Source: Macrostomum lignano
Lineage: Eukaryota
NCBI GenBank assembly: GCA_002269645.1
Contig: NIVC01000430.1
Coordinates: forward strand, 1 to 64,000
Direction: 5' to 3'
DNA length: 64,000 bases
Below the pieces are notes generated by a model that saw nothing but the letters and a program-made list of their open reading frames with translations, was not told the DNA's origin and searched no databases. Made by a program: the position numbers and the translations under genes. Positions 5,326 through 58,205 of this stretch are shown here, one piece after another (positions within the stretch are counted from its first letter, which is position 1; the number at the start of each line of letters is the position of its first letter).

Positions 5326-6429
<1,104 letters not shown>

Positions 6430-8451: not shown

Positions 8452-10992
8452 ATGCCATCATCTGGCAAGAAGGGCGGCAAGGGTGACAAGGAGAAGCGAA
8501 AGCGCGAGGCCGAGGAGCGCAGACGAATAGCAGAGGAGGAGGAGCGAATTCGCCAGGAGCAAGAGGAGCGGGAGCGCAGGAAACGCGAGAAAACGGAGGC
8601 CGAAGAGCGCAAGAAGCGGGAGAAGGCGGAGCAGAAGGTGCGCATAGTGGAGCTGGCCCAGCTGCGCGCTCTGCTTGGCGGCTACCACGCCAGCCGGGAT
8701 GCCCATTTTGCCGCTCTGCGCCGCGACGAGCGCTGGCGACGCTACCTGCGCTGCGACGGCTCTCCGGACCCGGTGGTGCTGCCCGAGATCAACACCTACA
8801 TGGTGGCCTGGCGCGAGGACGACAAGCGGGTGCTTATCGAGGACGTGCTTGAAGACTCCAAGCCCTGTCTGGGCTTAATCGCCGAGCTCGAGGACCACCT
8901 GGCTGATGACGAAGCCAGTCCGGAGCAGGTGCGGCAGTACCGCGGCACCATCGCCGATCTGCAGGCGCTGCTGCAGCAGAAGCTCAGCCGGGCAACCTAC
9001 GAGATGCTGAGGCGGGGCGCCAACGCGGCAGACTCCGAGACCATGAACCTGCAGGCCGTGTGGCGCAGCGACACGATCTGCCTGTGCCTGTGGGGCAACC
9101 TTAGCAAGAACCCGCGCATCAAGACATTCGAGTTCCCCGAGTCCGGCATCGGCTTCGACATTCCCAAGGCGTTGACAAAAGTTGGTTGCGCCTACCAGTT
9201 CCTGCTCACCACCTTCGACCATTATTCGCCCCAGTCGGCCAGTTTCTACGCTGTACCAATCAAAAAGGAAGAAGAGGTGGAGCCAGTTGTCGAGGAGGCC
9301 GAAGCGGCGGACGAGGCGGAGGGCGAGGGCGAAGGAGCTGAGAAGGGAGAAGAGCAGGTGGAAGAAGAGCCGGTCCGGGAACCGACTATGGACCTGATGG
9401 CGGAGCTGCAGCGAATGGACGGCGAGGAGCCGGAGGAGAAGGAGCCAGAGCCCGAGCCGGAGGAGGAGCTCGAGACACCTGAAGAGGACCTCTGCGTGTC
9501 GCCACCACCGATGGAGTTCGAGGACTTCGATGGCGAAGAGGACGCAATGGATCTTCGCGGGTATCACACAATCGGCCCGGTGATGCAGTTCAACATTCTC
9601 CAGCTGCCGCCGCAGCCGCAGAACAAACGCGGCTGGACGATCGTGCAGCACCTGGTGCCGCCTCAGCCAGTGAGCTTCGACTATCACCCCCAGCCGATTG
9701 TGCGCAAGGAAATCGAGGAGCTGCAGCAGCCCGACGAAGCCGGCGACGTGAATTCGGTGACTGAAGGCAGCAACCCAACGACTGTGAGCAACCAACTCAC
9801 CGCCACCAGCACGCAGCAGCAAGCAGCCAACAAGAAGCAGCCAGAGATTGAGAATCCGCCCATTTCGGTGAGCTTCAAGCTCCCATCGAATGTGTTCTAT
9901 GCCGAGGAACCTAAGGTGGCTTGCTGGGACGCCGAGCGCAAGGAGTGGCGCACGGACGGCATCGAGGTGACCAAATTCGACGAGGACAAGCGCGTCCTGA
10001 ATTTCCGCACTTCGGTGTTCGGCACTCTGGGCTTCCTGCAGGACTTCCACATCAATATGCCATTCCAGCAGTGGGAGCTTCGGCCGCTCGGCACCCGCAG
10101 CTGCCGGCTGAGCATCATCGCCAGCATCAACGAAGTGGCAATCCATGTCAAGGAGGACCTGGTCTGTATCCCGGAGACGCCATCAGACGCTGCTGAAGAC
10201 AGTCCGGAAGCAGACCCGGAGGTGCAGCTGGGCAAGCGGGAGCTTTCGCACCTGGAGGGCAAATGGATGCCTGTCAGAAGCCTCATCGCCTGTCTGCGTG
10301 CCGCAGGCGTTAACCTGTTCCCGCGCGAGGACTCGTCCAAGCACGTGGATGTGCCCGACAAGAGCAGCATTGCAGAACAGCGCCTCTACGAGCAGATGGC
10401 CCTGCTCAGCCCAGTCATGGCTTTTGCCTGGAGCCGCTGGAACTCGGAAATCAAGGACCGCGAGTCGCTCATCGTACAGGTGAATTATTTTCAAATTGGG
10501 TCACACCCTATAGATACCGCACCCTGAGAGTTCTCTACATGCAAGTAATGAAATTGGCTATGCGCAAACGTCATAGGACTTGATCACCCATTTGACTTAT
10601 TAGGATTTTTATAAGCCACAGTAAAGAGTGAACGGCGGGAGCAACGTTTGATTCGTTGAAAACCTCGTTATCTTATTAGTTTAGCATCGAAAACATCGAA
10701 AATTGACGTCCCACAGGCCTGCGAGCATATGGAGGACTGCCCGGTTAACGAAGATGACTATTACCTGTTCACCGTCACCCGGAGACACGTCCGCCGGCTC
10801 AAGATCAAGGAGTTCGCCGAGGAGTTCAGCGACGAGCCGGACGAGGCGGTTGGTTATCACGCGGATTTCTACAATTCGTTCCAAGAGTTCAGCAGCCAAG
10901 AGGCCAAGGACAGGGTGGCCGAGGTGGACTTCCAGTACCTCAAGACCGTTACGGACCTCCTGTCGGCCACCCGGATGCTGGTGTTCTCATGA
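8452..10992 (+). CDS. DNAI7: Dynein axonemal intermediate chain 7 (CFAP94/CASC1/LAS1); exons 8452-10479 and 10717-10992
   Basis: N-terminal K/E/R coiled coil followed by RYLRCDGSPDP...EINTYMVAW (Casc1_N) and WGNLSKNPR, VACWD...W, FQQWELRP. Donor CAG|GTGAAT at 10479, acceptor CCACAG| at 10716, in frame to TGA at 10990-10992. Confidence 0.9.
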
Positions 10993-16214: not shown

Positions 16215-16483
16215 AATTGATTACACCTGCCCCAATTGGCAGATGTGCAACCGACAGCTCAGCCACAGCTATTGCGCGGCGCATCTGAAGGCTGCGTACG
16301 GCTGTTCAGTCCAAGGACTGGGGGGTCGCTAATGCTGGCACCCATTCTACAGCTGGCTAAACTGAAGCAATGCAGAGTTAAGTGTCTTGCTCAATGACAA
16401 AAATTGTTCCAGTGGGATCGGGAATCGAACCCCCGACCTTCAAGTCGTGAATCCGACGCTCTAACCACAAGGCTAAAACCCCC
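16215..16483 (-). mobile_element. tRNA-derived CORE-SINE
   Basis: Minus strand has an A box TAGCCTTGTGG, a perfect B box GGTTCGATTCC and a Val(CAC)-like loop, then TGTCATTGAGCAAGACACTTAACTCTGCATTGCTTCAGTTTAGCCAGCTGTAGAATGGGTG (16399-16339), which aligns to the MIR CORE sequence. The 3' boundary is approximate. Confidence 0.75.
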
Positions 16484-16605
16484 AAGCAATTAAAACTATT
16501 CTTGACGGACTCCTATCACAAAGCTACATTTGGGTACTGAGTTGCTAAGGAAAAACTGACAACAGTGACAATTTTTCAAATCCAACGCTGCATCACAGAA
16601 CTCCA

Positions 16606-17529
16606 TCAGCGCAGAATGACAGCGAGTTTATCCGCACTTTGTACGCTCAGCTTCCAAGTGACGTTATGTGAGGTGGTGTACAACAGCCGCGGCGGCGAGG
16701 TCATGTTGCCGCCGGCCCAGTCGACAGCGCAGCCGTCGGTTACGTCGAGAGCTACCATGAGGCCGAGATCGCCCGGGCAGCCGCCGTAAGCATAATTGAT
16801 GAACCAGCGACGCTCGAGTATGCCATCAGAATGACCTTCGATGCTGAAGTAGTTGAAGGTCCTGCTGGCAAGGTCGGTGACGGGCCAGCTGGCCTTCAGC
16901 CGGTCCCGAGAGAACCAGTTGGTCCTGTTCAGCTCGTGAGGCGACGCTGAGAGGTCGAAGGTGACCTTCACGACGACGGAGTCGGCGACAGAGAGCTGGA
17001 CGACGGCCTCCTTGAAGGTGAGCTTCGGCGCTACGGTGGGCAGCTGGTCGATGGCGCTGGCGCGGAACAGGTCGGGCAGGAGGCTGGCGGACCCGGGTGT
17101 GCCCTGGACGGCGGAGCCGTTGCTGCGGCTCGGCGAGTCGACCAGATCGAACGACTTGACGCCGACGCCCGCTCGGATGCTCAGCCCGAGGAAGCCGCGC
17201 TCGGCGACGTCGCAGGACACGAGGCAGCGGCCCCCTGCCGAGGCCGAGACGGGGCAGGCGGCGAAGTCGCCACAGTCGGTCGGGCGACGCTCGCAGACAC
17301 CGGCGGCGGCGTCCCACGTGACCGACTCGCCCGCGGCGGCTCCCGTCGGCTGCGGCAGGTCCGGCCGGAAGCAGCCGCGGACGCCTTGGCTGCCGCTGGC
17401 GACTCGAACCGGCGGCTCGCAGATCGATGCGAACTGCGACTCCGTGAAGCAGCGGAGCTGTCCGGCGGCGGCCCCGGCGGCCAGCAGCAGCGCCAGGCAC
17501 GTCAGGAGTGTCGCACCGGACGACTTCAT
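16606..17529 (-). CDS. Secreted Cys-rich protein, copy 1 (307 aa, intronless, unknown family)
   Basis: Signal peptide MKSSGATLLTCLALLLAAGAAAG, an 8-Cys N-terminal module, and a C-terminal domain with NWFSRDRL...FSIEG...RRWFINYAYGGC...C..W. N-glycosylation sequons present. The ORF is intact. Confidence 0.85.
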   Translation of the reverse strand: MKSSGATLLTCLALLLAAGAAAGQLRCFTESQFASICEPPVRVASGSQGVRGCFRPDLPQPTGAAAGESVTWDAAAGVCERRPTDCGDFAACPVSASAGGRCLVSCDVAERGFLGLSIRAGVGVKSFDLVDSPSRSNGSAVQGTPGSASLLPDLFRASAIDQLPTVAPKLTFKEAVVQLSVADSVVVKVTFDLSASPHELNRTNWFSRDRLKASWPVTDLASRTFNYFSIEGHSDGILERRWFINYAYGGCPGDLGLMVALDVTDGCAVDWAGGNMTSPPRLLYTTSHNVTWKLSVQSADKLAVILR

Positions 17530-18379
17530 TGATCAGTGCAAGTCTATGTCAGTGGTTTGGCCAGTCGATTTTTCTCTTCCAGTTTTGAGCGGCTCTAACG
17601 CTTGCTGGTTTTAGAGCATTTATTTCGCTTGCTGCCGGATCCAGCAAAACTTTTTGCGGATTGGCTGGGGGATTTTGGTCTCGCCCTGCAGACTCATCAA
17701 TTATTGGGCACGGCCATCTTTGCAGGACTCCGGAGATCCGCAAGACGGCTGTTTTGACAACGAAGTGAGGGGCTTGCAAGCTGAGTTGCTGCACTCTTCA
17801 AATTGCAAGAGTGGAAAAGTTTGCGTCCGATTAGGGATAGAAAACCTGCTTACTCAGGCTACGTTAAAAATAATTTGAAGCACTAATGTTAGCTACTAAG
17901 CACGCATTATTGTTCCCTCCTGGGGACTGGCGGCTGCGGATTAATTAATTAATGATGAGGCTACTCAGGAAGACTGGCTGGAGGAAGAGGCAACTGTTTC
18001 AGGCAGAAACTTTTCTTAACAAGTGGAGGACTTTAAACTGTTTCGACTGCAAGAAATTGCCAGTAAAAGTATTGGAGAGGCGCGTTGGACTCTGCGACTA
18101 AGAGGCAGAATTCGTTTTCAAAATAAATGTACATTTATGCATTCCATGTGGAGTTTTCTAGACCGAACACTTTTACCCGTTGTAAAAGAAGACAATTGGT
18201 GCAAAATCCGTTGTTGTCGTTGTGGCAGCCTAGTAGTCCAGTGCGGTGTTCTGATGTGCCAACGGCCCAGGTTCGATTCCAAGTGCAGTCACATTAATTT
18301 GAGGCTAAATTTGAATCTCGGCTTGACTCTGCTCGTGCAATTAACGCACTTGAAGGTCAACTCCCAAGGCAAAGTGAAG

Positions 18380-18654
18380 TGTACATGTCTAACGACAAAG
18401 AAAGTTAGGGCCGCTGTACACTCCTGTGTGAGTGTGTGTGCCTGTGCGTATGACTGAGTACGTATCCGCGCGCTTGGACCCTTGGAGTGTGCCTGCTCAG
18501 GTGAGTCGGCGGAATGTGCAGTAATGCCTCTCGCAGGTTGTGCGACAATGTCGCTTAATGTGCGCCAGTGTGCACACACCATCCTGCCTCTAATAAAACA
18601 CGAATAAAAGAAGTCTAGCACGCATTCAAACTCTATTTGCAATGCGGCAGGACA
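18380..18654 (+). mobile_element. Solo LTR (275 bp, Ty3/Gypsy-like) with 4-bp TSD
   Basis: Starts TGTAC, ends GGACA, and is flanked on both sides by GAAG (18376-18379 and 18655-18658). Two AATAAA signals lie near the 3' end. Confidence 0.6.
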
Positions 18655-18984
18655 GAAGGTGAGAAGTCAATTTACCGCTACGCAACTGATAATCCCCCCC
18701 TATTACCGATAATGCAAATTTAGACAAAGCTGGCCATACATATATTTGCTAGCCATTTAATTCGCACTGGACATTGTCTCTTGGCCTTGACAATTCCTTA
18801 AAATCTTTGCATACGTGACTGACATTTAGGATACCAAAACATTGATAGTTAAATTTAAGTTTTCACGGATTTATTGATATTTGCAAAGACTGGTTACCAT
18901 AGCAGTATAAGGTATCGAACCTGAAGTAGAAGAGCGGCAATTATAGATGTTGTACTACTAACTATCTGCACTGAACCATAGAAG

Positions 18985-19995
18985 ATTCATTGCACGTCGC
19001 AACGCCTCTGGATCTCCTCCAGGCTTCCCTCTGCACGTCCCAACGCCTCTGGATCTCCTCCAGGCTTCCCTCTGCACGTCGCAACGCCTCTGGATCTCCT
19101 CCAGGCTTCCCTCTGCACGTCCCAACGCCTCTGGATCTCCTCCAGGCTTCCCTCTGCACGTCGCAACGCCTCTGGATCTCCTCCAGGCTTCCCTCTGCAC
19201 GTCGCAACGCCTCTGGATCTCCTCCAGGCTTCCCTCTGCACGTCGCAACGCCTCTGGATCTCCTCCAGGCTTCCCTCTGCACGTCCCAACGCCTCTGGAT
19301 CTCCTCCAGGCTTCCCTCTGCACGTCGCAACGCCTCTGGATCTCCTCCAGGCTTCCCTCTGCACGTCCCAACGCCTCTGGATCTCCTCCAGGCTTCCCTC
19401 TGCACGTCCCAACGCCTCTGGATCTCCTCCAGGCTTCCCTCTGCACGTCCCAACGCCTCTGGATCTCCTCCAGGCTTCCCTCTGCACGTCGCAACGCCTC
19501 TGGATCTCCTCCAGGCTTCCCTCTGCACGTCCCAACGCCTACCTGGATCTCTCCAGGCTTCCCTCTGCACGTCCCAACGCCCATCTGGATCTCTCCAGGC
19601 TTCCCTGTACACGTCCCAACGCCTCTGGATCTCTTCAGGCTTCCCTGTGCACGTCCCAACGCCTCTGGATCTCTCCAGGCTTCCCTCTGCACGTCCCAAC
19701 GCCTATCTGGATCTCTCCAGGCTTCCCTCTGCACGTCCCAACGCCTACCTGGATCTCTCCAGGCTTCCCTCTGCACGTCCCAACGCCTATCTGGATCTCT
19801 TCAGGCTTCCCTCTGCACGTCCCAACGCCTCTGGATCTCCTCCAGGCTTCACTCTGCACGTCCCAACGCCTCTGGATCTCCTCCAGGCTTCCCTCTGCAC
19901 GTCCCAACGCCTTTGGATCTCCTCCAGGCTTCCCTCTGCACGTCCCAACGCCTCTGGATCTCCTCCAGGCTTCACCCATCGCGTCCCAACGCCTA
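18985..19995. repeat. 41-bp minisatellite between secreted-protein copies 1 and 2
   Basis: Unit GCACGTC(C/G)CAACGCCTCTGGATCTCCTCCAGGCTTCCCTCT, about 24 copies. Confidence 0.95.
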
Positions 19996-20331
19996 TGGAT
20001 TTGCGGGCTTCACTCATCGTGTCCCAAAGTCTAAATAAAACTCATTAGCGTCAAATTTATAGTACTGAGGCCGAGCTTCCAAGCCGACCACAGTCACCAC
20101 ATCTGAAATCTATTTCCTCAAAGATGAAACTTCGTTCTACTGATAATAAACTGACTGGATAGCAAGGAATTCTTTAGACTAAATTGCAGCCGGGCTCAGA
20201 ATTTAAGACAGAAAGAGCATTACTGTACATTGTGCGCAAGTTTCGGATTGCAAAACATTCGGTCTAAAATGGATAACACTGCCAGCAGCAGCCACCCTCT
20301 GCACTGCCAGCTCACACTGGTTTCAGGCAGC

Positions 20332-21237
20332 TCAGCGTAGGGTCACGGCCAGCCTGTCAGCAAGCTGGAAACTGCTCTTAAACGCCACATCCGACTGCGT
20401 GCTGTACACCAGCCGCGGCGGCGAGGTCACACTGCCGTTGCCCCAGGAGGCAGCGCAGCCGTCGGTTATGTCGAGAGCTACCATGAGGCCGCGGTCTCTG
20501 TTGCAGCCGCCGTAAGCATAATTGATGAACCAACGGCGCTCAAGTTTACGCTTGACATGACCCCCAATGCTGAAGTAGTTAAAGCTCTTTCTGGCGAGGT
20601 CGGTGACGGGCCAGCTGGCCTTCAGCCGGTCCCGAGAGAACCAGTTGGTCCTGTTCAGCTCGTGAGGCGACGCTGAGAGGTCGAAGGTGACCTTCACGAC
20701 GACGGAGTCGGCGACAGAGAGCTGGACGACGGCCTCCTTGAAGGTGAGCTTCGGCGCTACGGTGGGCAGCTGGTCGATGGCGCTGGCGCGGAACAGGTCG
20801 GGCAGGAGGCTGGCGGACCCGGGTGTGCCCTGGACGGCGGAGCCGTTGCTGCGGCTCGGCGAGTCGACCAGATCGAATGACTTGATGCCGACGCCCGCTC
20901 GGATGCTCAGCGCGAGGAAGCCGCGATCGGCGACGTCGCAGGACACGAGGCAGCGGCCCCCTGCCGAGGCCGAGACGGGGCAGGCGGCGAAGTCGCCACA
21001 GTCGGTCGGGCGACGCTCGCAGACACCGGCGGCGGCGTCCCACGTGACCGACTCGCCCGCGGCGGCTCCCGTCGGCTGCGGCAGGTCCGGCCGGAAGCAG
21101 CCGCGGACGCCTTGGCTGCCGCTGGCGACTCGAACCGGCGGCTCGCAGATCGATGCGAACTGCGACTCCGTGAAGCAGTCGGGCTCAGCAGCGGCGCCCA
21201 CCAGCAGCACCAAGCACGTAAAGAGTGGCGCAATCAT
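20332..21237 (-). CDS. Secreted Cys-rich protein, copy 2 (intronless, unknown family)
   Basis: ATG at 21237 (MIAPLFTCLVLLVGAAAEPDC). The mature N-terminal two-thirds is almost identical to copy 1; the C-terminal third is diverged. The ORF is intact. Confidence 0.85.
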   Translation of the reverse strand: MIAPLFTCLVLLVGAAAEPDCFTESQFASICEPPVRVASGSQGVRGCFRPDLPQPTGAAAGESVTWDAAAGVCERRPTDCGDFAACPVSASAGGRCLVSCDVADRGFLALSIRAGVGIKSFDLVDSPSRSNGSAVQGTPGSASLLPDLFRASAIDQLPTVAPKLTFKEAVVQLSVADSVVVKVTFDLSASPHELNRTNWFSRDRLKASWPVTDLARKSFNYFSIGGHVKRKLERRWFINYAYGGCNRDRGLMVALDITDGCAASWGNGSVTSPPRLVYSTQSDVAFKSSFQLADRLAVTLR

Positions 21238-21841
21238 TTTTGCAGACAAATTTTCAACTGGTGAAAAGCAGCAGTGCGAAAACGAGGGAACGAACAAGCG
21301 GCCTCTTATACCTTTGATCTCTTATACCTGACCCAGTTAACTTCCCAGTTAACTGCACACTCTGGCCAGAGGGGGATTCTCTAGCAAGTAAAACGTGTTG
21401 AGCCGGGCTGAGCAGCTCAGTAAGGTGCTCAGAGTGCCGGTCTGTTTACTCAAATTTCCGCTAAAGGCTATCAAAACACGCCGTTTCTATGGTGACGGGG
21501 CCAGCGCAATTTTTCCGCAAATTTCCTCGGTAGGAGAAACGAATTCACTACTCAGTTATCAGCAAACAATTGCGTTTGACACTAAAGGTGAGTCAACTTG
21601 AGTAACTTCGATTTTTGCAAGGAGCAAGGAGGATTTTTGTGACGCCTTCAAAATTTCCTGCAGTCGTCAAATATCCTGCAGGTAACAGGCTAGTCACACA
21701 CAATGAGCTGCTTAAAGTGAAAGCTGTATTCAGGCATACAAGGCTTGGGCTCAGTCGGCTCTCTTTCAAAATTCCAATGCAAATTGGAATAGAACCACAG
21801 CTTAACTCTTGCAACAAGACGCCATAGAAGTGCGTCCGCAT

Positions 21842-21855
21842 GTTTCCATGGAAAC
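21842..21855. promoter_or_regulatory. Perfect palindromic X-box (RFX site) between the head-to-head copies 2 and 3
   Basis: GTTTCCATGGAAAC matches GTTNCCATGGNAAC exactly. Confidence 0.5.
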
Positions 21856-22085
21856 GCAGTGCTTACCCTAAGCAATTTTATAATTGGGACCCAGCAGGTG
21901 CGTTTCCTGCAAGCCTTCTTAAATTATTAACCAAGCAATGAGTCTGCTTGCCTGTTTACGAACTGCCAAGGAGCACAGGGCCGGTGGGGAAGCTGGCAGG
22001 TATACGCTCGTAATATATTCAGAAGAATGAGTAGAGAGGAAAACTGCTTTAAGTTGATTCTAACGTAATCCACTGTACGACAGAC

Positions 22086-22951
22086 ATGGCGCATGTGAGG
22101 GTGCCGCTCCTGACGTGCCTGACACTGCTGCTGGGCCCGGCTGCTTCACGGAGTCGCAGTTCGCATCGACCTGCGAGCCGCCGGTTCGAGTCGCCAGCGG
22201 CAGCCATGGCCAGACCTGCCGCAGCCGATGGGAGCCGCCGCGGGCGAGTCGGTCACGTGGAAGGCCGACTCCGGTGTCTGCGAGCGTCGCCCGACCGACT
22301 GCGGCGACTTCGCCGCCTGCCCCGTCTCGGCCTCGGCAGGGGGCCGCTGCCTCGTGTCCTGCGACGTCGCCGAGCGCGGCTTCCTCGCGCTGAGCATCCG
22401 AGCGGGCGTCGGCGTCAAGTCGTTCGACCTGGTCGACTCGCCGAGCCGCAGCAACGGCTCCGCCGTCCGGGGCACGCCCAGCTCCGCCCGACCTGTTCCG
22501 CGCCAGCGCCATCGACCAGCTGCCCACCGTGGCGCCGAAGCTCACCTTCAAGGAGGCCGTCGTCCAGCTCTCTGTCGCCGCCTCTGTCGTCGTGAAGGTC
22601 ACCTTCGACCTCTCGGCGTCGCCTCACGAGCTAAACAGGACCAACTGGTTCTCTCGGGACCGGCTGAAGGCCAGCTGGCCCGTCACCGACCTCGCCAGCA
22701 GGACCTTCCAATTCTTCAGCATTGCTGGCGATGCTAGTGGACAGCGCCGCTGGTTCATTCACTAGTTTTACGGCGGCTGCCCGGGTGATCTTGGACTCAT
22801 GGTAGCTCTCGACGTAACCGACGTCTGCGCTGTCGACTGGGCCGGCGGCAACATGACCTCGCCGCCGCGGCTGGTGTACAGCACGCAGCCGGACGTGCCG
22901 CTTGAGACCAGTTTCCGCCTTGCTGACAAGCTGGCCGTGACGCTACGCTAG
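22086..22951 (+). pseudogene. Secreted Cys-rich protein, copy 3 (pseudogene, inverted)
   Basis: Homologous to copies 1 and 2 over its full length, but with three multi-nucleotide frameshifting deletions (after the signal peptide, near 22212, and 11 nt near 22486) and an in-frame TAG at 22763-22765 where the others have Tyr. The natural stop is at 22949-22951. Confidence 0.8.
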
Positions 22952-24487: not shown

Positions 24488-25863
24488 TCACACTGAGTAG
24501 TCCGGGTTGCCGGCCCGCAGGCTCTTGAGAAAGGCGCCCCATTCGACCGGCTTGGTGGCCGCCGACGTCGCCTTTACTGCCTGCATCTCGGCCAGCCAGC
24601 CGGCCAGAGCCGTATCGCTGGCAGCCGGCTCCGGACAGTCGAGCACGCCGGCCAGACCGGTTGCTATGGCAACGGCCGGATAGGCGATCAGGTCGGCCAG
24701 GCCGACAGTCTGAGCGCCGCCAATGAAAGGCTTGGGGCCGAGGCGCTCGCCAAACTGGCGCATGGCGGCCGTAACCTGCTCCAGCTTCTCCGGAGCCTCA
24801 TCCGGCCGAGTCATGAGGTCGTGCATGGGCGGGAAGAACTCGCCCAGCCAGGCCAGGGCCAGCCGCTCGGCATCCGCATTGCTGCACAGCTGGGCCTCCG
24901 AGACGCCGCCAGACGGCAGCTCGTCAACGTAGCGGCAGATCATGAGGGAGTCGACCAGCCTCTGAGACCCCATCATCAGCACGGGCACCTTGCCGCCTGG
25001 GTTGATTTCGGCGAACCATTCGGGCTTGGCGGACAAGTTGATGTACACCGACTGGTAGGGAATACCGCGCTGGTTCAGCGCCAGGACCACCCGCTGGCAG
25101 AACGGGCAGAATTTCGATTCGAACAGCACCAGGGCGTCCTCGCCGGCTGGCAGCTCCGGGCGGGCGTCGCCTGCAGATTTTTTAAACAAAAAAATTAGAA
25201 TAAAAAACACGCTCGCCTACTAAAAGTAGACAATAGTGGTGACACATTTTAATTCGTGTCTACACTGGCTCTGTTACTCTGCATCGCCCAAGCCTCGCCC
25301 AACCCTAAATATTTGCTGCCGAGTTGCCATCTGCTTCCAGCCTCTCCTCTCCATCCTTTACTACCGAGTTGCCATCTGCTTCCAGCCTCTCCTCTCCATC
25401 CTTTGTACTGCCGAGTTGCCATCTGCTTCCAGCCTCTCCTCTCCATCCTTTGTACTGCCGAGTTGCCATCTGCTTCCAGCCTCTCCTCTCCATCCTTTGT
25501 ACTGCCGAGTTGCCATCTGCTTCCAGACTCTCCTCTCCGTCATTTGCAGCCGAGTTGTCATTTGCTTCCAGCCTCTCCTCTCCATCCTTTTTTGCCGAGT
25601 TGCCATCAGCTTCCAGCCTCTTCTCTCCATCATTTGCATGATAATCCAAGTTGCCATTTGCTTCGAGCCTCTCCTCTCCATCCTTTGAAACCGAATTCCA
25701 TTTGCTTCCAAATCATTTTTTGCCTAGCTGCCATGTGCTTCCAGCCTCTCCTCTCCATCATTTTGTACTGCCGAGTTGCCAACTGATACCAGCCTCTCCT
25801 CTCCATCCAGAATACACCCCAAATTAACCAAAAAGATTTACCAGTTTTGTAGTGATAGACCAT
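24488..25863 (-). CDS. GSTO: Glutathione S-transferase, omega-like; exons 25863-25842 and 25170-24488
   Basis: Micro-exon MVYHYKT with a phase-1 donor G|GTAAAT and acceptor TCTGCAG|, then SKFCPFCQRVVLAL...INLSAKPEWFAEINPGGKVPVL...DSLMICRYVDE and PFIGG...GLADLIAYP (N-cap motif). Confidence 0.85.
25315..25805. repeat. 47-bp minisatellite in the GST intron
   Basis: Unit GCCGAGTTGCCATCTGCTTCCAGCCTCTCCTCTCCATCCTTTGTACT, degenerating rightwards. Confidence 0.9.

Positions 25864-28084: not shown

Positions 28085-40695
<12,611 letters not shown>

Positions 40696-44305: not shown

Positions 44306-58205
<13,900 letters not shown>

What the first reader, a model, noticed from the sequence alone, without database searches (positions are those of the whole stretch)
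16606..22951. Cluster of three intronless secreted Cys-rich protein genes of unknown family
Seen: two intact genes (-) and one inverted pseudogene (+). Each has a signal peptide, an 8-Cys N-terminal module and a roughly 200-aa C-terminal domain with two Cys and the motifs LSIRAGVG, NWFSRDRL, FSIxG, RRWFINYAYGGC and CxxxW...PRLxY. They lack introns, unlike most neighbours. Inference: the C-terminal motifs recall an uncharacterised extracellular domain I associate with mollusc, cnidarian and amphioxus proteins, which I cannot name. A locally expanded secreted family like this would fit mucus, adhesive or innate-recognition (lectin-like) roles.
Basis: partly seen in the sequence, partly recalled or inferred. 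Interest (0 to 1): 0.75.

Follow-up and report, generated by a model that had tools for sequence, protein, structure and literature searches.

The report
Flatworm secreted fibrinogen-like-related gene cluster
Three neighbouring gene copies (two intact, one dead) in the flatworm Macrostomum lignano encode secreted proteins whose C-terminal domain belongs to a large family that no curated database describes. The family is shared by marine invertebrates and predatory bacteria, is distantly tied to fibrinogen-type recognition domains, and has no tested function.

Summary
Copy 1 (16606-17529, -) and copy 2 (20332-21237, -) are intact, intronless ORFs that are 85% identical. Copy 3 (22086-22951, +) is a pseudogene with three frameshifting deletions and an in-frame TAG.

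The window is Macrostomum lignano. Neither intact protein is in the 15-billion-protein collection.

A profile search finds 966 relatives. Named ones come from amphioxus, a coral, gastropods, an acorn worm, a crinoid and Myxococcota, plus at least 11 other M. lignano gene models holding 39 domain copies. Canonical members put a fibrinogen/collagen-propeptide-type 'YCDxxxxGGGW' subdomain in front of an uncurated region of about 160 aa (NWF..FSIxG..FINxxYGGC..CxW..AVFVR). The window proteins keep that core but have lost GGGW.

Pfam, NCBIfam, PDB sequences, hhalign and Foldseek give no significant match to the core. Membership in the fibrinogen-related superfamily therefore rests only on the N-terminal subdomain.

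The copies are mosaics made by gene conversion. Their old 3' parts show purifying selection (omega 0.35) and opposite net charge.

The most likely function is a secreted ligand (probably glycan) recognition head. This is inferred, not shown, and expression was not tested.

The parts
16606..17529 (-). Copy 1: intact intronless CDS, 307 aa plus stop
   Evidence: ORF list; tblastn self-hit; GC3 of 0.85 matches host genes
17461..17529 (-). Copy 1 codons 1-23: predicted signal peptide (MKSSGATLLTCLALLLAAGAAAG)
   Evidence: Hydrophobic core with Kyte-Doolittle windows up to 2.5; judged by eye, no predictor run
17212..17460 (-). Copy 1 codons 24-106: Cys-rich region (C27, C37, C53, C79, C86, C92, C102, C106). 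Its C-terminal part is a vestigial fibrinogen-type A-subdomain with a Cys-rich insertion.
   Evidence: Cys positions; hhalign aligns residues 53-120 to the YCD..GGGW subdomain of intelectin-1, angiopoietin-2 and ficolin at 87-94% probability; pLDDT below 50 for residues 20-68
16609..17211 (-). Copy 1 codons 107-307: C-terminal domain. The family core is about residues 148-307 and carries NWF, FSIxG, R240, YGGC251, D254, C267, W271 and the terminal strand LAVILR.
   Evidence: Profile search; conserved-column check; tandem M. lignano units align to residues 148-306; AlphaFold pLDDT mostly above 90 from residue 110
16870..17451 (-). Copy 1 codons 27-220: tract homogenised with copy 2 (5 differences in 582 nt)
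   Evidence: dS of 0.013 here against 0.71 in codons 221-307; 99.1% identity
20332..21237 (-). Copy 2: intact intronless CDS, 301 aa plus stop; first ATG at 21237
20596..21177 (-). Copy 2 codons 21-214: the tract homogenised with copy 1
22086..22951 (+). Copy 3: inverted pseudogene, head-to-head with copy 2. It has three frameshifting deletions, one 6-nt deletion and a premature TAG at 22763-22765.
   Evidence: DNA alignment; lesion map; fragmented ORFs

Best explanation
The cluster holds three paralogues of a gene family that has expanded in Macrostomum lignano. Two are functional and one is dead.

Each intact gene encodes a protein of about 30 kDa. It has an N-terminal signal-like hydrophobic stretch and N-glycosylation sequons, so it is probably secreted and glycosylated. 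It has three parts:
- a lineage-specific Cys-rich N-terminus;
- a degenerate remnant of the fibrinogen/collagen-propeptide-type 'YCDxxxxGGGW' subdomain, in which CD is kept and GGGW is lost;
- a well-conserved domain of about 160 aa from a large uncurated family (consensus NWF..SSWTDL..NYFSIxGD..RxFFINxNYGGCxxDxGW..CxWE..Y..W..ADxxAVFVR).

In other organisms this domain sits at the extreme C-terminus of secreted or surface proteins. It follows the YCDxxxxGGGW subdomain in bacteria and corals, or stands alone or in tandem arrays in animals.

By analogy with ficolins, tachylectin-5, intelectins and angiopoietins, I infer that it is an extracellular ligand-recognition head, most probably glycan-binding. 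The invariant R240, C251-C267 pair and D254 region would form the core or pocket.

The paralogues exchange sequence by gene conversion. Their old, purifying-selected last 87 residues differ in surface charge (-1 against +7), which would give them different ligand preferences.

Shown here: the gene anatomy, the host organism, family membership, the conversion mosaic, and the purifying selection on the last 87 codons of the core. Inferred: secretion, the binding function, the disulphide pattern, and the relation of the core to the fibrinogen fold.
For: - ORFs and lesions.
- Host: the window's aquaporin is an exact member of an M. lignano protein cluster. P0003, UniRef A0A1I8IVZ4 from M. lignano, holds a near-identical fourth paralogue. 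GC3 of 0.84-0.85 equals that of neighbouring host genes.
- Family: 966 representatives at E<=1e-3 and 572 at E<=1e-10. The window keeps all 4 invariant columns and most of the conserved columns in its C-terminal half.
- Named members from Branchiostoma, Oculina, Lymnaea, Biomphalaria, Elysia, Ptychodera, Anneissia and Myxococcota.
- M. lignano expansion: 11 other gene models with 39 domain copies.
- Link to fibrinogen-type domains: PF00147 matches 21 of 64 members, PF01410 16 of 64 and NF040941 25 of 64, all on the N-terminal subdomain. The family profile hits intelectins, tenascin, MFAP4, tachylectin-5A and angiopoietin-2 chains in the PDB at E 2e-5 to 2e-2. hhalign gives 87-94% probability over 40-46 columns. 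I count 26 of the 50 best weak Foldseek hits as fibrinogen-type domains aligned over 110-270 columns, mostly 190-270.
- Selection and conversion: codons 27-220 have dS 0.013; codons 221-307 have dS 0.71, dN 0.25 and omega 0.35.
- Charge and sequons.
Against: - No tool links the conserved core of about 160 aa to any characterised domain. Pfam, NCBIfam and PDB sequence searches of the window protein are empty.
- hhalign and my own fibrinogen-domain HMM stop after the A-subdomain.
- Foldseek has nothing better than E=0.23 and TM 0.35 against PDB or BFVD.
- The window proteins lack several family-conserved residues: the GGGW tryptophan, HYxN, W163, W257 (now L) and E272. If a family binding site exists, it may be altered here.
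- No evidence of transcription was obtained. The exact proteins are absent from the protein collection and the contig index.
- No family member has a tested function. The only functional hint from context is one sub-threshold match of a bacterial member to the Bdellovibrio fibre N-terminus (27 bits against a cut-off of 60).
Confidence: 0.6

Rival explanations
1. The proteins are structural components of a secretion (mucus, glycocalyx, adhesive, eggshell or seminal fluid matrix). They would work by self-assembly or cross-linking through their many cysteines, not by specific ligand recognition.
For: - 10 Cys in the mature protein, a low-complexity Ser/Ala/Pro stretch at residues 130-150 with low pLDDT, and N-glycosylation sequons.
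- The family occurs in tandem arrays and in mosaic matrix-like proteins with EGF modules in amphioxus.
- There is a large lineage-specific expansion.
Against: - The identified M. lignano adhesive proteins are Mlig-ap1 and Mlig-ap2, with unrelated architecture (PMC6410801).
- The domain is compact and folded with high pLDDT, and sits at the C-terminal end like a recognition head in bacterial members.
- Nothing distinguishes this reading from the best explanation without expression and binding data.
Confidence: 0.2
2. They are ordinary fibrinogen-related lectins of the ficolin, tachylectin-5 or FREP type. They would bind acetylated sugars through the calcium-dependent P-subdomain pocket.
For: - The A-subdomain of family members is recognised by PF00147.
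- UniProt names two mollusc members 'Fibrinogen C-terminal domain-containing protein'.
- Fibrinogen-type domains dominate the weak Foldseek hits.
Against: - The window proteins get no PF00147 hit even at E<=1.
- hhalign against an 18-sequence ficolin/angiopoietin profile aligns only 46 columns.
- None of the canonical motifs (DGSVDF, FWLGN, the DxDxD calcium site, GGWWYxxCxxSNLNG) align.
- GGGW is lost in the window proteins.
Confidence: 0.05
3. All three copies are decaying or never-expressed relics, so the cluster has no current function.
For: - Copy 3 is clearly dead.
- The exact proteins are not in any annotation or assembly-derived protein set searched.
- A fourth paralogue appears only inside a chimeric gene model that seems to skip a frameshift.
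Against: - Copies 1 and 2 keep full open frames of more than 900 nt.
- Across a segment with dS of 0.71 their omega is 0.35.
- They keep every invariant family residue.
Confidence: 0.07
4. The genes are bacterial contamination or a very recent horizontal transfer from a predatory bacterium.
For: - One of only two hits in the first protein search is a metagenomic protein of canonical YCDxxxxGGGW type (P0002).
- One such relative is named Myxococcota, and others look bacterial from their lipoprotein-like signal or metagenomic source.
- The genes are intronless and GC-rich.
Against: - They lie between metazoan genes on one contig: a CASC1-like gene upstream, a GST-like gene and an insulin-receptor-like kinase downstream.
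- GC3 equals that of host genes.
- Their closest relatives are other M. lignano and animal proteins.
- Several neighbouring host genes are also intronless.
Confidence: 0.03

Closest known systems
Fibrinogen-related domain superfamily (Pfam PF00147; ficolins, tachylectin-5A, angiopoietins, tenascin, MFAP4)
   Same: - Canonical family members start with the same Cys...YCDxxxxGGGWT(L/V) subdomain.
- The domain is C-terminal, extracellular, and ends on a hydrophobic strand followed by Arg (AVFVR against MKIRP).
- It has a Cys-x(15)-Cys pair near the C-terminus.
- Reading the AlphaFold secondary structure by eye, the order of strands and helices parallels the A, B and P layout (inference).
   Different: - No sequence or profile similarity beyond about 46 columns.
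- No calcium-site or acetyl-pocket motifs.
- The core of about 160 aa can occur without the A-subdomain and in tandem arrays, which true fibrinogen-related domains are not known to do (my knowledge).
- The window proteins themselves have lost GGGW.
Intelectins / X-type lectins (human ITLN1 4WMY, Xenopus XEEL 4WMO, serum lectin 7E1E)
   Same: - These are the best PDB sequence hits of the family profile (E 1.7e-5 to 2.5e-3), and hhalign gives 94% probability.
- Like this family, they join a fibrinogen-like N-terminal part to a divergent C-terminal region, and end in a similar strand (AAVLLFYR).
   Different: Only 44 columns align. None of the intelectin-specific calcium or diol-binding region is matched.
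NCBIfam NF040941 'fibrinogen-like YCDxxxxGGGW domain-containing protein' (bacterial)
   Same: 25 of 64 sampled family members match it. These are the canonical members of the same family.
   Different: The model is 46 positions long and covers only the N-terminal motif. The window proteins do not match it, and the conserved core is outside it.
Fibrillar collagen C-propeptide (Pfam PF01410 COLFI)
   Same: 16 of 64 family members, among them a coral protein, match COLFI positions of about 20-97, the same YCD-type subdomain.
   Different: Most of the individual hits shown fall below the gathering score. No match to the rest of COLFI, and no match for the window proteins.
Tip domains of Bdellovibrio mosaic adhesive trimer fibres (PMC10769870)
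   Same: One bacterial member (P0119) has a weak match to the fibre N-terminal model and carries this domain at its C-terminal tip. That is where those fibres place prey-binding lectin-like heads.
   Different: The match is 27 bits against a cut-off of 60. None of the solved tip folds appeared in the Foldseek search. This bears only on how the domain is used in bacteria.

Membership tests
Uncurated 'NWF-FSIxG-YGGC' C-terminal domain family (defined here by profile A2/A3) | Significant profile or pairwise similarity over the core of about 160 aa | tested here: met
   The profile finds 966 representatives. phmmer of copy 1 against members gives E 1e-28 to 1e-9, and 50-93 bits per domain against M. 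lignano arrays.
Uncurated 'NWF-FSIxG-YGGC' C-terminal domain family (defined here by profile A2/A3) | Invariant R, C, D, C and the near-invariant W205, D219, F228, G232, Y248, G256 and A299 | tested here: met
   All are present in copies 1 and 2. The exceptions lie in other conserved positions: W257 is L, W163 is L, and E272 is A or G.
Fibrinogen-related domain (PF00147 / PROSITE PS51406) | Match of the protein to the curated family model | tested here: not met
   No Pfam family at E<=1 for copy 1 or copy 2. No PDB sequence hit at E<=10.
Fibrinogen-related domain (PF00147 / PROSITE PS51406) | A-subdomain with Cys...YCDxxxxGGGW | tested here: inconclusive
   It is present in 28 of 64 sampled relatives. 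In the window proteins only C53...C106-D107 remain, with F113 in place of the GGGW region. hhalign places this stretch on the A-subdomain at 87-94% probability.
Fibrinogen-related domain (PF00147 / PROSITE PS51406) | Homologous B and P subdomains (DGSVDF, FWLGN, calcium site, CA..GGWWY..C..SNLNG) | tested here: not met
   hhalign against 2-sequence and 18-sequence fibrinogen-domain profiles aligns only 40-46 columns. My own fibrinogen-domain HMM hits only HMM positions of about 100-172.
Fibrinogen-related domain (PF00147 / PROSITE PS51406) | Fibrinogen-type three-dimensional fold | tested here: inconclusive
   The model has pLDDT above 90 over most of residues 110-307. By my count, 26 of the top 50 Foldseek PDB hits are fibrinogen-type domains, but the best E is 0.23 and TM is at most 0.35. 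The model could not be trimmed or superposed with the tools at hand.
Intelectin / X-type lectin | Intelectin-specific C-terminal region with calcium and diol-binding residues | tested here: not met
   hhalign against ITLN1 (the sequence was checked against 4WMQ) aligns 44 N-terminal columns only.
NCBIfam NF040941 GGGWT_bact | Score at or above 30 bits to the 46-position model | tested here: not met
   No hit for the window protein at E<=10, although relatives score 40-88 bits.
Fibrillar collagen C-propeptide (PF01410) | Match to the COLFI model | tested here: not met
   None for the window proteins. Relatives match only positions of about 20-97, mostly below the cut-off.

The most novel reading that the evidence does not exclude
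The conserved core of about 160 aa may be a previously undescribed autonomous domain, possibly a new fold or a radically remodelled fibrinogen B/P unit. On this reading it serves as a glycan-recognition head both on surface fibres of predatory bacteria and in secreted or matrix proteins of marine invertebrates. Its patchy distribution between kingdoms would reflect ancient horizontal transfer. The M. lignano expansion (more than 40 domain copies) would form a diversifying recognition repertoire, comparable in logic to snail FREPs.
Probability: 0.25. Interest if true: 0.65.

Novelty: new variant of a known kind. Interest (0 to 1): 0.4.

Why it matters
The family has about a thousand 50%-identity clusters, yet it has no Pfam or NCBIfam model for its core, no solved structure and no tested function. 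Describing it would fill a gap in domain catalogues. It would also give a testable candidate recognition module shared by predatory bacteria, corals, molluscs, deuterostome invertebrates and flatworms.

For Macrostomum, a model for regeneration, adhesion and sexual selection, it points to an unannotated, expanded set of secreted proteins. These evolve by gene conversion together with divergence in surface charge. The practical value is modest until expression and a ligand are shown.

Tried and rejected
- Pfam, NCBIfam and PDB sequence searches of the window proteins found nothing.
- The first structure prediction, from a 4-sequence alignment, failed with pLDDT 31.
- The word-indexed protein search was of little use here. 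It found 2 hits with the single protein and 6 with the 64-sequence alignment. Used on ficolin and angiopoietin, it returned almost only mammalian ficolins, so the fibrinogen-domain profile stayed shallow.
- Foldseek against PDB and BFVD gave no significant match.
- hhalign against fibrinogen-domain profiles and intelectin-1, and my own fibrinogen-domain HMM, matched only the A-subdomain.
- Exact-sequence look-ups of copies 1 and 2 found no annotated gene or contig, so no expression proxy was available.
- A literature search for the motifs, and for fibrinogen in Macrostomum, found nothing relevant.
- tRNA and Rfam scans of the window were empty. The bacterial promoter scan is irrelevant for a eukaryote.
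- Contamination or recent horizontal transfer was considered and rejected on context and GC3.
- Canonical ficolin-like lectin and intelectin membership were rejected (see the membership table).

Full report
**What is in the sequence**

The ORF list and a tblastn of copy 1 against the window show exactly three related units.
- Copy 1 is 16606-17529 on the minus strand, 307 aa, starting at an ATG.
- Copy 2 is open from 20332. Its first ATG is at 21237, giving 301 aa.
- The two proteins are 85% identical.
- Copy 3 is on the plus strand at 22086-22951, head-to-head with copy 2.

Copy 3 carries deletions of 22, 19 and 11 nt, a 6-nt deletion, and a TAG at 22763-22765 replacing the Tyr of the YAYGGC motif. 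It is a pseudogene.

The cysteine count is correct: eight up to residue 106, then C251 and C267. The N-termini are hydrophobic and look like signal peptides (judged by eye).

**Organism and context**

The window's aquaporin ORF (5413-6429) is an exact member of a protein cluster whose named members are Macrostomum lignano proteins PAA58593.1 and PAA58579.1. The closest relative of the cluster, P0003, is a chimeric M. lignano gene model (UniRef A0A1I8IVZ4) that contains a fourth, near-identical paralogue.

The neighbours are metazoan genes: a CASC1-like gene, an aquaporin, an omega-type GST, an SH3-SAM protein, and an insulin-receptor-like kinase spread over many exons. The window is packed with minisatellites.

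GC3 of copies 1 and 2 (0.85 and 0.84) equals that of the neighbours (0.78-0.84). Contamination or recent horizontal transfer is therefore excluded.

The aquaporin is a single-ORF gene, and the CASC1-like and GST-like genes also lie in single long ORFs.

Neither copy 1 nor copy 2 exists as an exact protein in the 15-billion-sequence collection or in the contig index. The genes appear to be unannotated.

**The family**

Curated libraries say nothing about the window proteins. The word-indexed search found only a Lymnaea protein and a metagenomic protein.

A profile of these four sequences, scored against 1.84 billion representatives, found 966 proteins at E<=1e-3 and 572 at E<=1e-10.

Names recovered for a sample place the family in:
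- Branchiostoma (four tandem domains, separated by EGF-like Cys-rich linkers by eye);
- the coral Oculina;
- the gastropods Lymnaea, Biomphalaria and Elysia;
- the acorn worm Ptychodera and the crinoid Anneissia;
- Myxococcota;
- many unnamed metagenomic proteins.

In M. lignano itself, 11 further gene models carry 39 copies of the domain, mostly as tandem units of about 155 aa that align to window residues 148-306. After P0003, these are the closest relatives of the window proteins.

**Relation to known domains**

Canonical members (the bacterial-type ones and a coral protein) begin with 'VYCDMTTDGGGWTLVFK'. That N-terminal part is matched by Pfam Fibrinogen_C in 21 of 64 sampled members, by COLFI in 16 of 64, and by NCBIfam NF040941 in 25 of 64. 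Every one of these matches stops after about 50 residues.

The family profile hits PDB chains of intelectins, tenascin, MFAP4, tachylectin-5A, angiopoietin-2 and fibrinogen, again only over the first 100 or so profile positions.

I then ran profile-profile comparisons:
- 87% probability over 40 columns against angiopoietin-2 plus ficolin-2;
- 94% over 44 columns against intelectin-1;
- 92% over 46 columns against an 18-sequence fibrinogen-domain profile.

A fibrinogen-domain HMM that I built hits only the A-subdomain of GGGW-type members, and nothing in the animal-type members or the window proteins.

With a 64-sequence alignment, AlphaFold gives a confident model for residues 110-307 (pLDDT mostly above 90). 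The N-terminal 20-68 is disordered.

Foldseek finds nothing significant in PDB or BFVD (best E 0.23, TM at most 0.35). By my count, 26 of the 50 best weak PDB hits are fibrinogen-type domains aligned over most of the model, and the rest are mainly galectins and PL7 lyases.

UniProt calls two mollusc members that lack the YCD motif 'Fibrinogen C-terminal domain-containing protein'. I treat that as a lead, not a test.

My reading is this. The family is attached to the fibrinogen/intelectin/COLFI superfamily through its N-terminal subdomain. The conserved core of about 160 aa is not demonstrably homologous to any described domain, and it behaves as an autonomous module: it occurs alone and in tandem.

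**How the window proteins differ from the family norm**

They keep the four invariant residues (R240, C251, D254, C267) and most of the conserved C-terminal-half positions: W205, D219, N226, F228, G232, Y248, G256, W271, Y284, A299 and D300.

They have lost the GGGW tryptophan, the HYxN motif, W163, W257 (now Leu) and E272.

The stretch C53...C106-D107 aligns to the A-subdomain with a 17-residue Cys-rich insertion.

**Evolution of the cluster**

Nucleotide similarity between the copies ends within the coding sequence, and the flanks cannot be aligned.

Between copies 1 and 2:
- codons 27-220 differ at 5 of 582 nt (dS 0.013);
- codons 221-307 have dS 0.71, dN 0.25 and omega 0.35.

Copy 3 is 96% identical to both in the central tract. 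In codons 263-282 it is 98% identical to copy 1 but only 82% to copy 2. In codons 283-307 it is 87% identical to copy 2 but only 53% to copy 1.

This patchwork is the signature of repeated gene conversion among old duplicates. The low omega in the unconverted part argues that copies 1 and 2 are functional.

The divergent part changes net charge from -1 (copy 1) to +7 (copy 2), and the mature pI from 6.0 to 8.4. The substitutions cluster in loops next to the invariant residues.

**Function**

Nothing here tests function. The domain sits at the C-terminal end of secreted or surface proteins. It is associated with the fibrinogen-type subdomain. One bacterial member has a weak, sub-threshold match to the N-terminus of a Bdellovibrio adhesive fibre (PMC10769870). 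The family has expanded and diversified in charge in one animal.

From these points I infer a secreted ligand-recognition head, most probably glycan-binding, at about 40% on its own. A structural or matrix role is the main rival. The known M. lignano glue proteins are unrelated (PMC6410801).

**Verdict**

This is a real gene cluster. It is a divergent variant of a known kind of protein (fibrinogen-superfamily-linked extracellular heads), not a categorically new system. Interest is moderate, because function and expression are unknown and the link of the core to any fold is unresolved.

Noticed in passing
window 5413-6429 (+): An aquaporin gene in one ORF. It is an exact sequence match to a cluster of annotated Macrostomum lignano proteins, which identifies the organism.
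   Followed up: yes
window 44306-57963 (-): An insulin-receptor-like tyrosine kinase split over many exons: receptor L and furin-like domains at 57247-57963, and the kinase C-lobe at 44306-44743. Its introns are filled with minisatellites and (TGTC)n / (CAGA)n runs.
   Followed up: partly
window 8452-10527 (+): A 691-aa single ORF with Casc1_N and Casc1_C domains (a CASC1/DNAI7-like axonemal protein). The exact sequence is not in the protein collection.
   Followed up: partly
window 24488-25210 (-): An omega/CLIC-like glutathione S-transferase in a single ORF, immediately downstream of the cluster. No ATG is near the start of the ORF, so its first exon may lie elsewhere.
   Followed up: partly
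window 31076-32355 (-): Adjacent ORFs with an SH3 domain and a SAM domain, probably two exons of one adaptor gene, with long poly-Gln and poly-Ala runs.
   Followed up: no
window 18991-20000: A 41-bp minisatellite (24.6 copies, 95% matches) fills most of the spacer between copies 1 and 2 and creates long spurious ORFs in all frames. TRF reports 53 rows at score >=100 across the window, some of them overlapping descriptions of the same array.
   Followed up: partly
window ~16380-16500 (-), core at 16412-16434: About 170 nt downstream of the copy 1 stop codon there is a stretch with a tRNA B-box-like 'GGTTCGATTCCCG' and flanks that look like a SINE. ARAGORN and Rfam call no tRNA, and the 23-mer occurs once in the window.
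   Followed up: partly
P0003 residues 1314-1571 (UniRef A0A1I8IVZ4, M. lignano): A fourth paralogue lies elsewhere in the genome. It is fused by gene prediction into a 2216-aa model that starts with Ig/FN3 receptor-phosphatase-like sequence. The model seems to skip a frameshift ('CPGAAASCPATS' is the out-of-frame reading seen in copy 3).
   Followed up: partly
P0006, P0155, P0156, P0009, P0302, P0012, P0303-P0306 (M. lignano UniRef models): These gene models consist largely of tandem copies of this domain. They carry unrelated automatic names (Peptidase S9, TSPc, CBM_X, MULTIHEME_CYTC, HZS_alpha, DUF4091). The names are likely annotation artefacts or fused tandem genes.
   Followed up: partly
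L002 10001-12836 and 17902-19979 (Lymnaea stagnalis CAXITT010000197.1): The Lymnaea homologues are also tandem paralogues, but they have introns, one of them filled with a minisatellite. Intron loss is therefore specific to the flatworm copies.
   Followed up: partly
window 37013-38700 (-): ORFs containing ankyrin-repeat-like sequence ([19 protein letters not shown]..., [13 protein letters not shown]) are interrupted by tetranucleotide and 37-bp repeats. This was judged by eye only.
   Followed up: no
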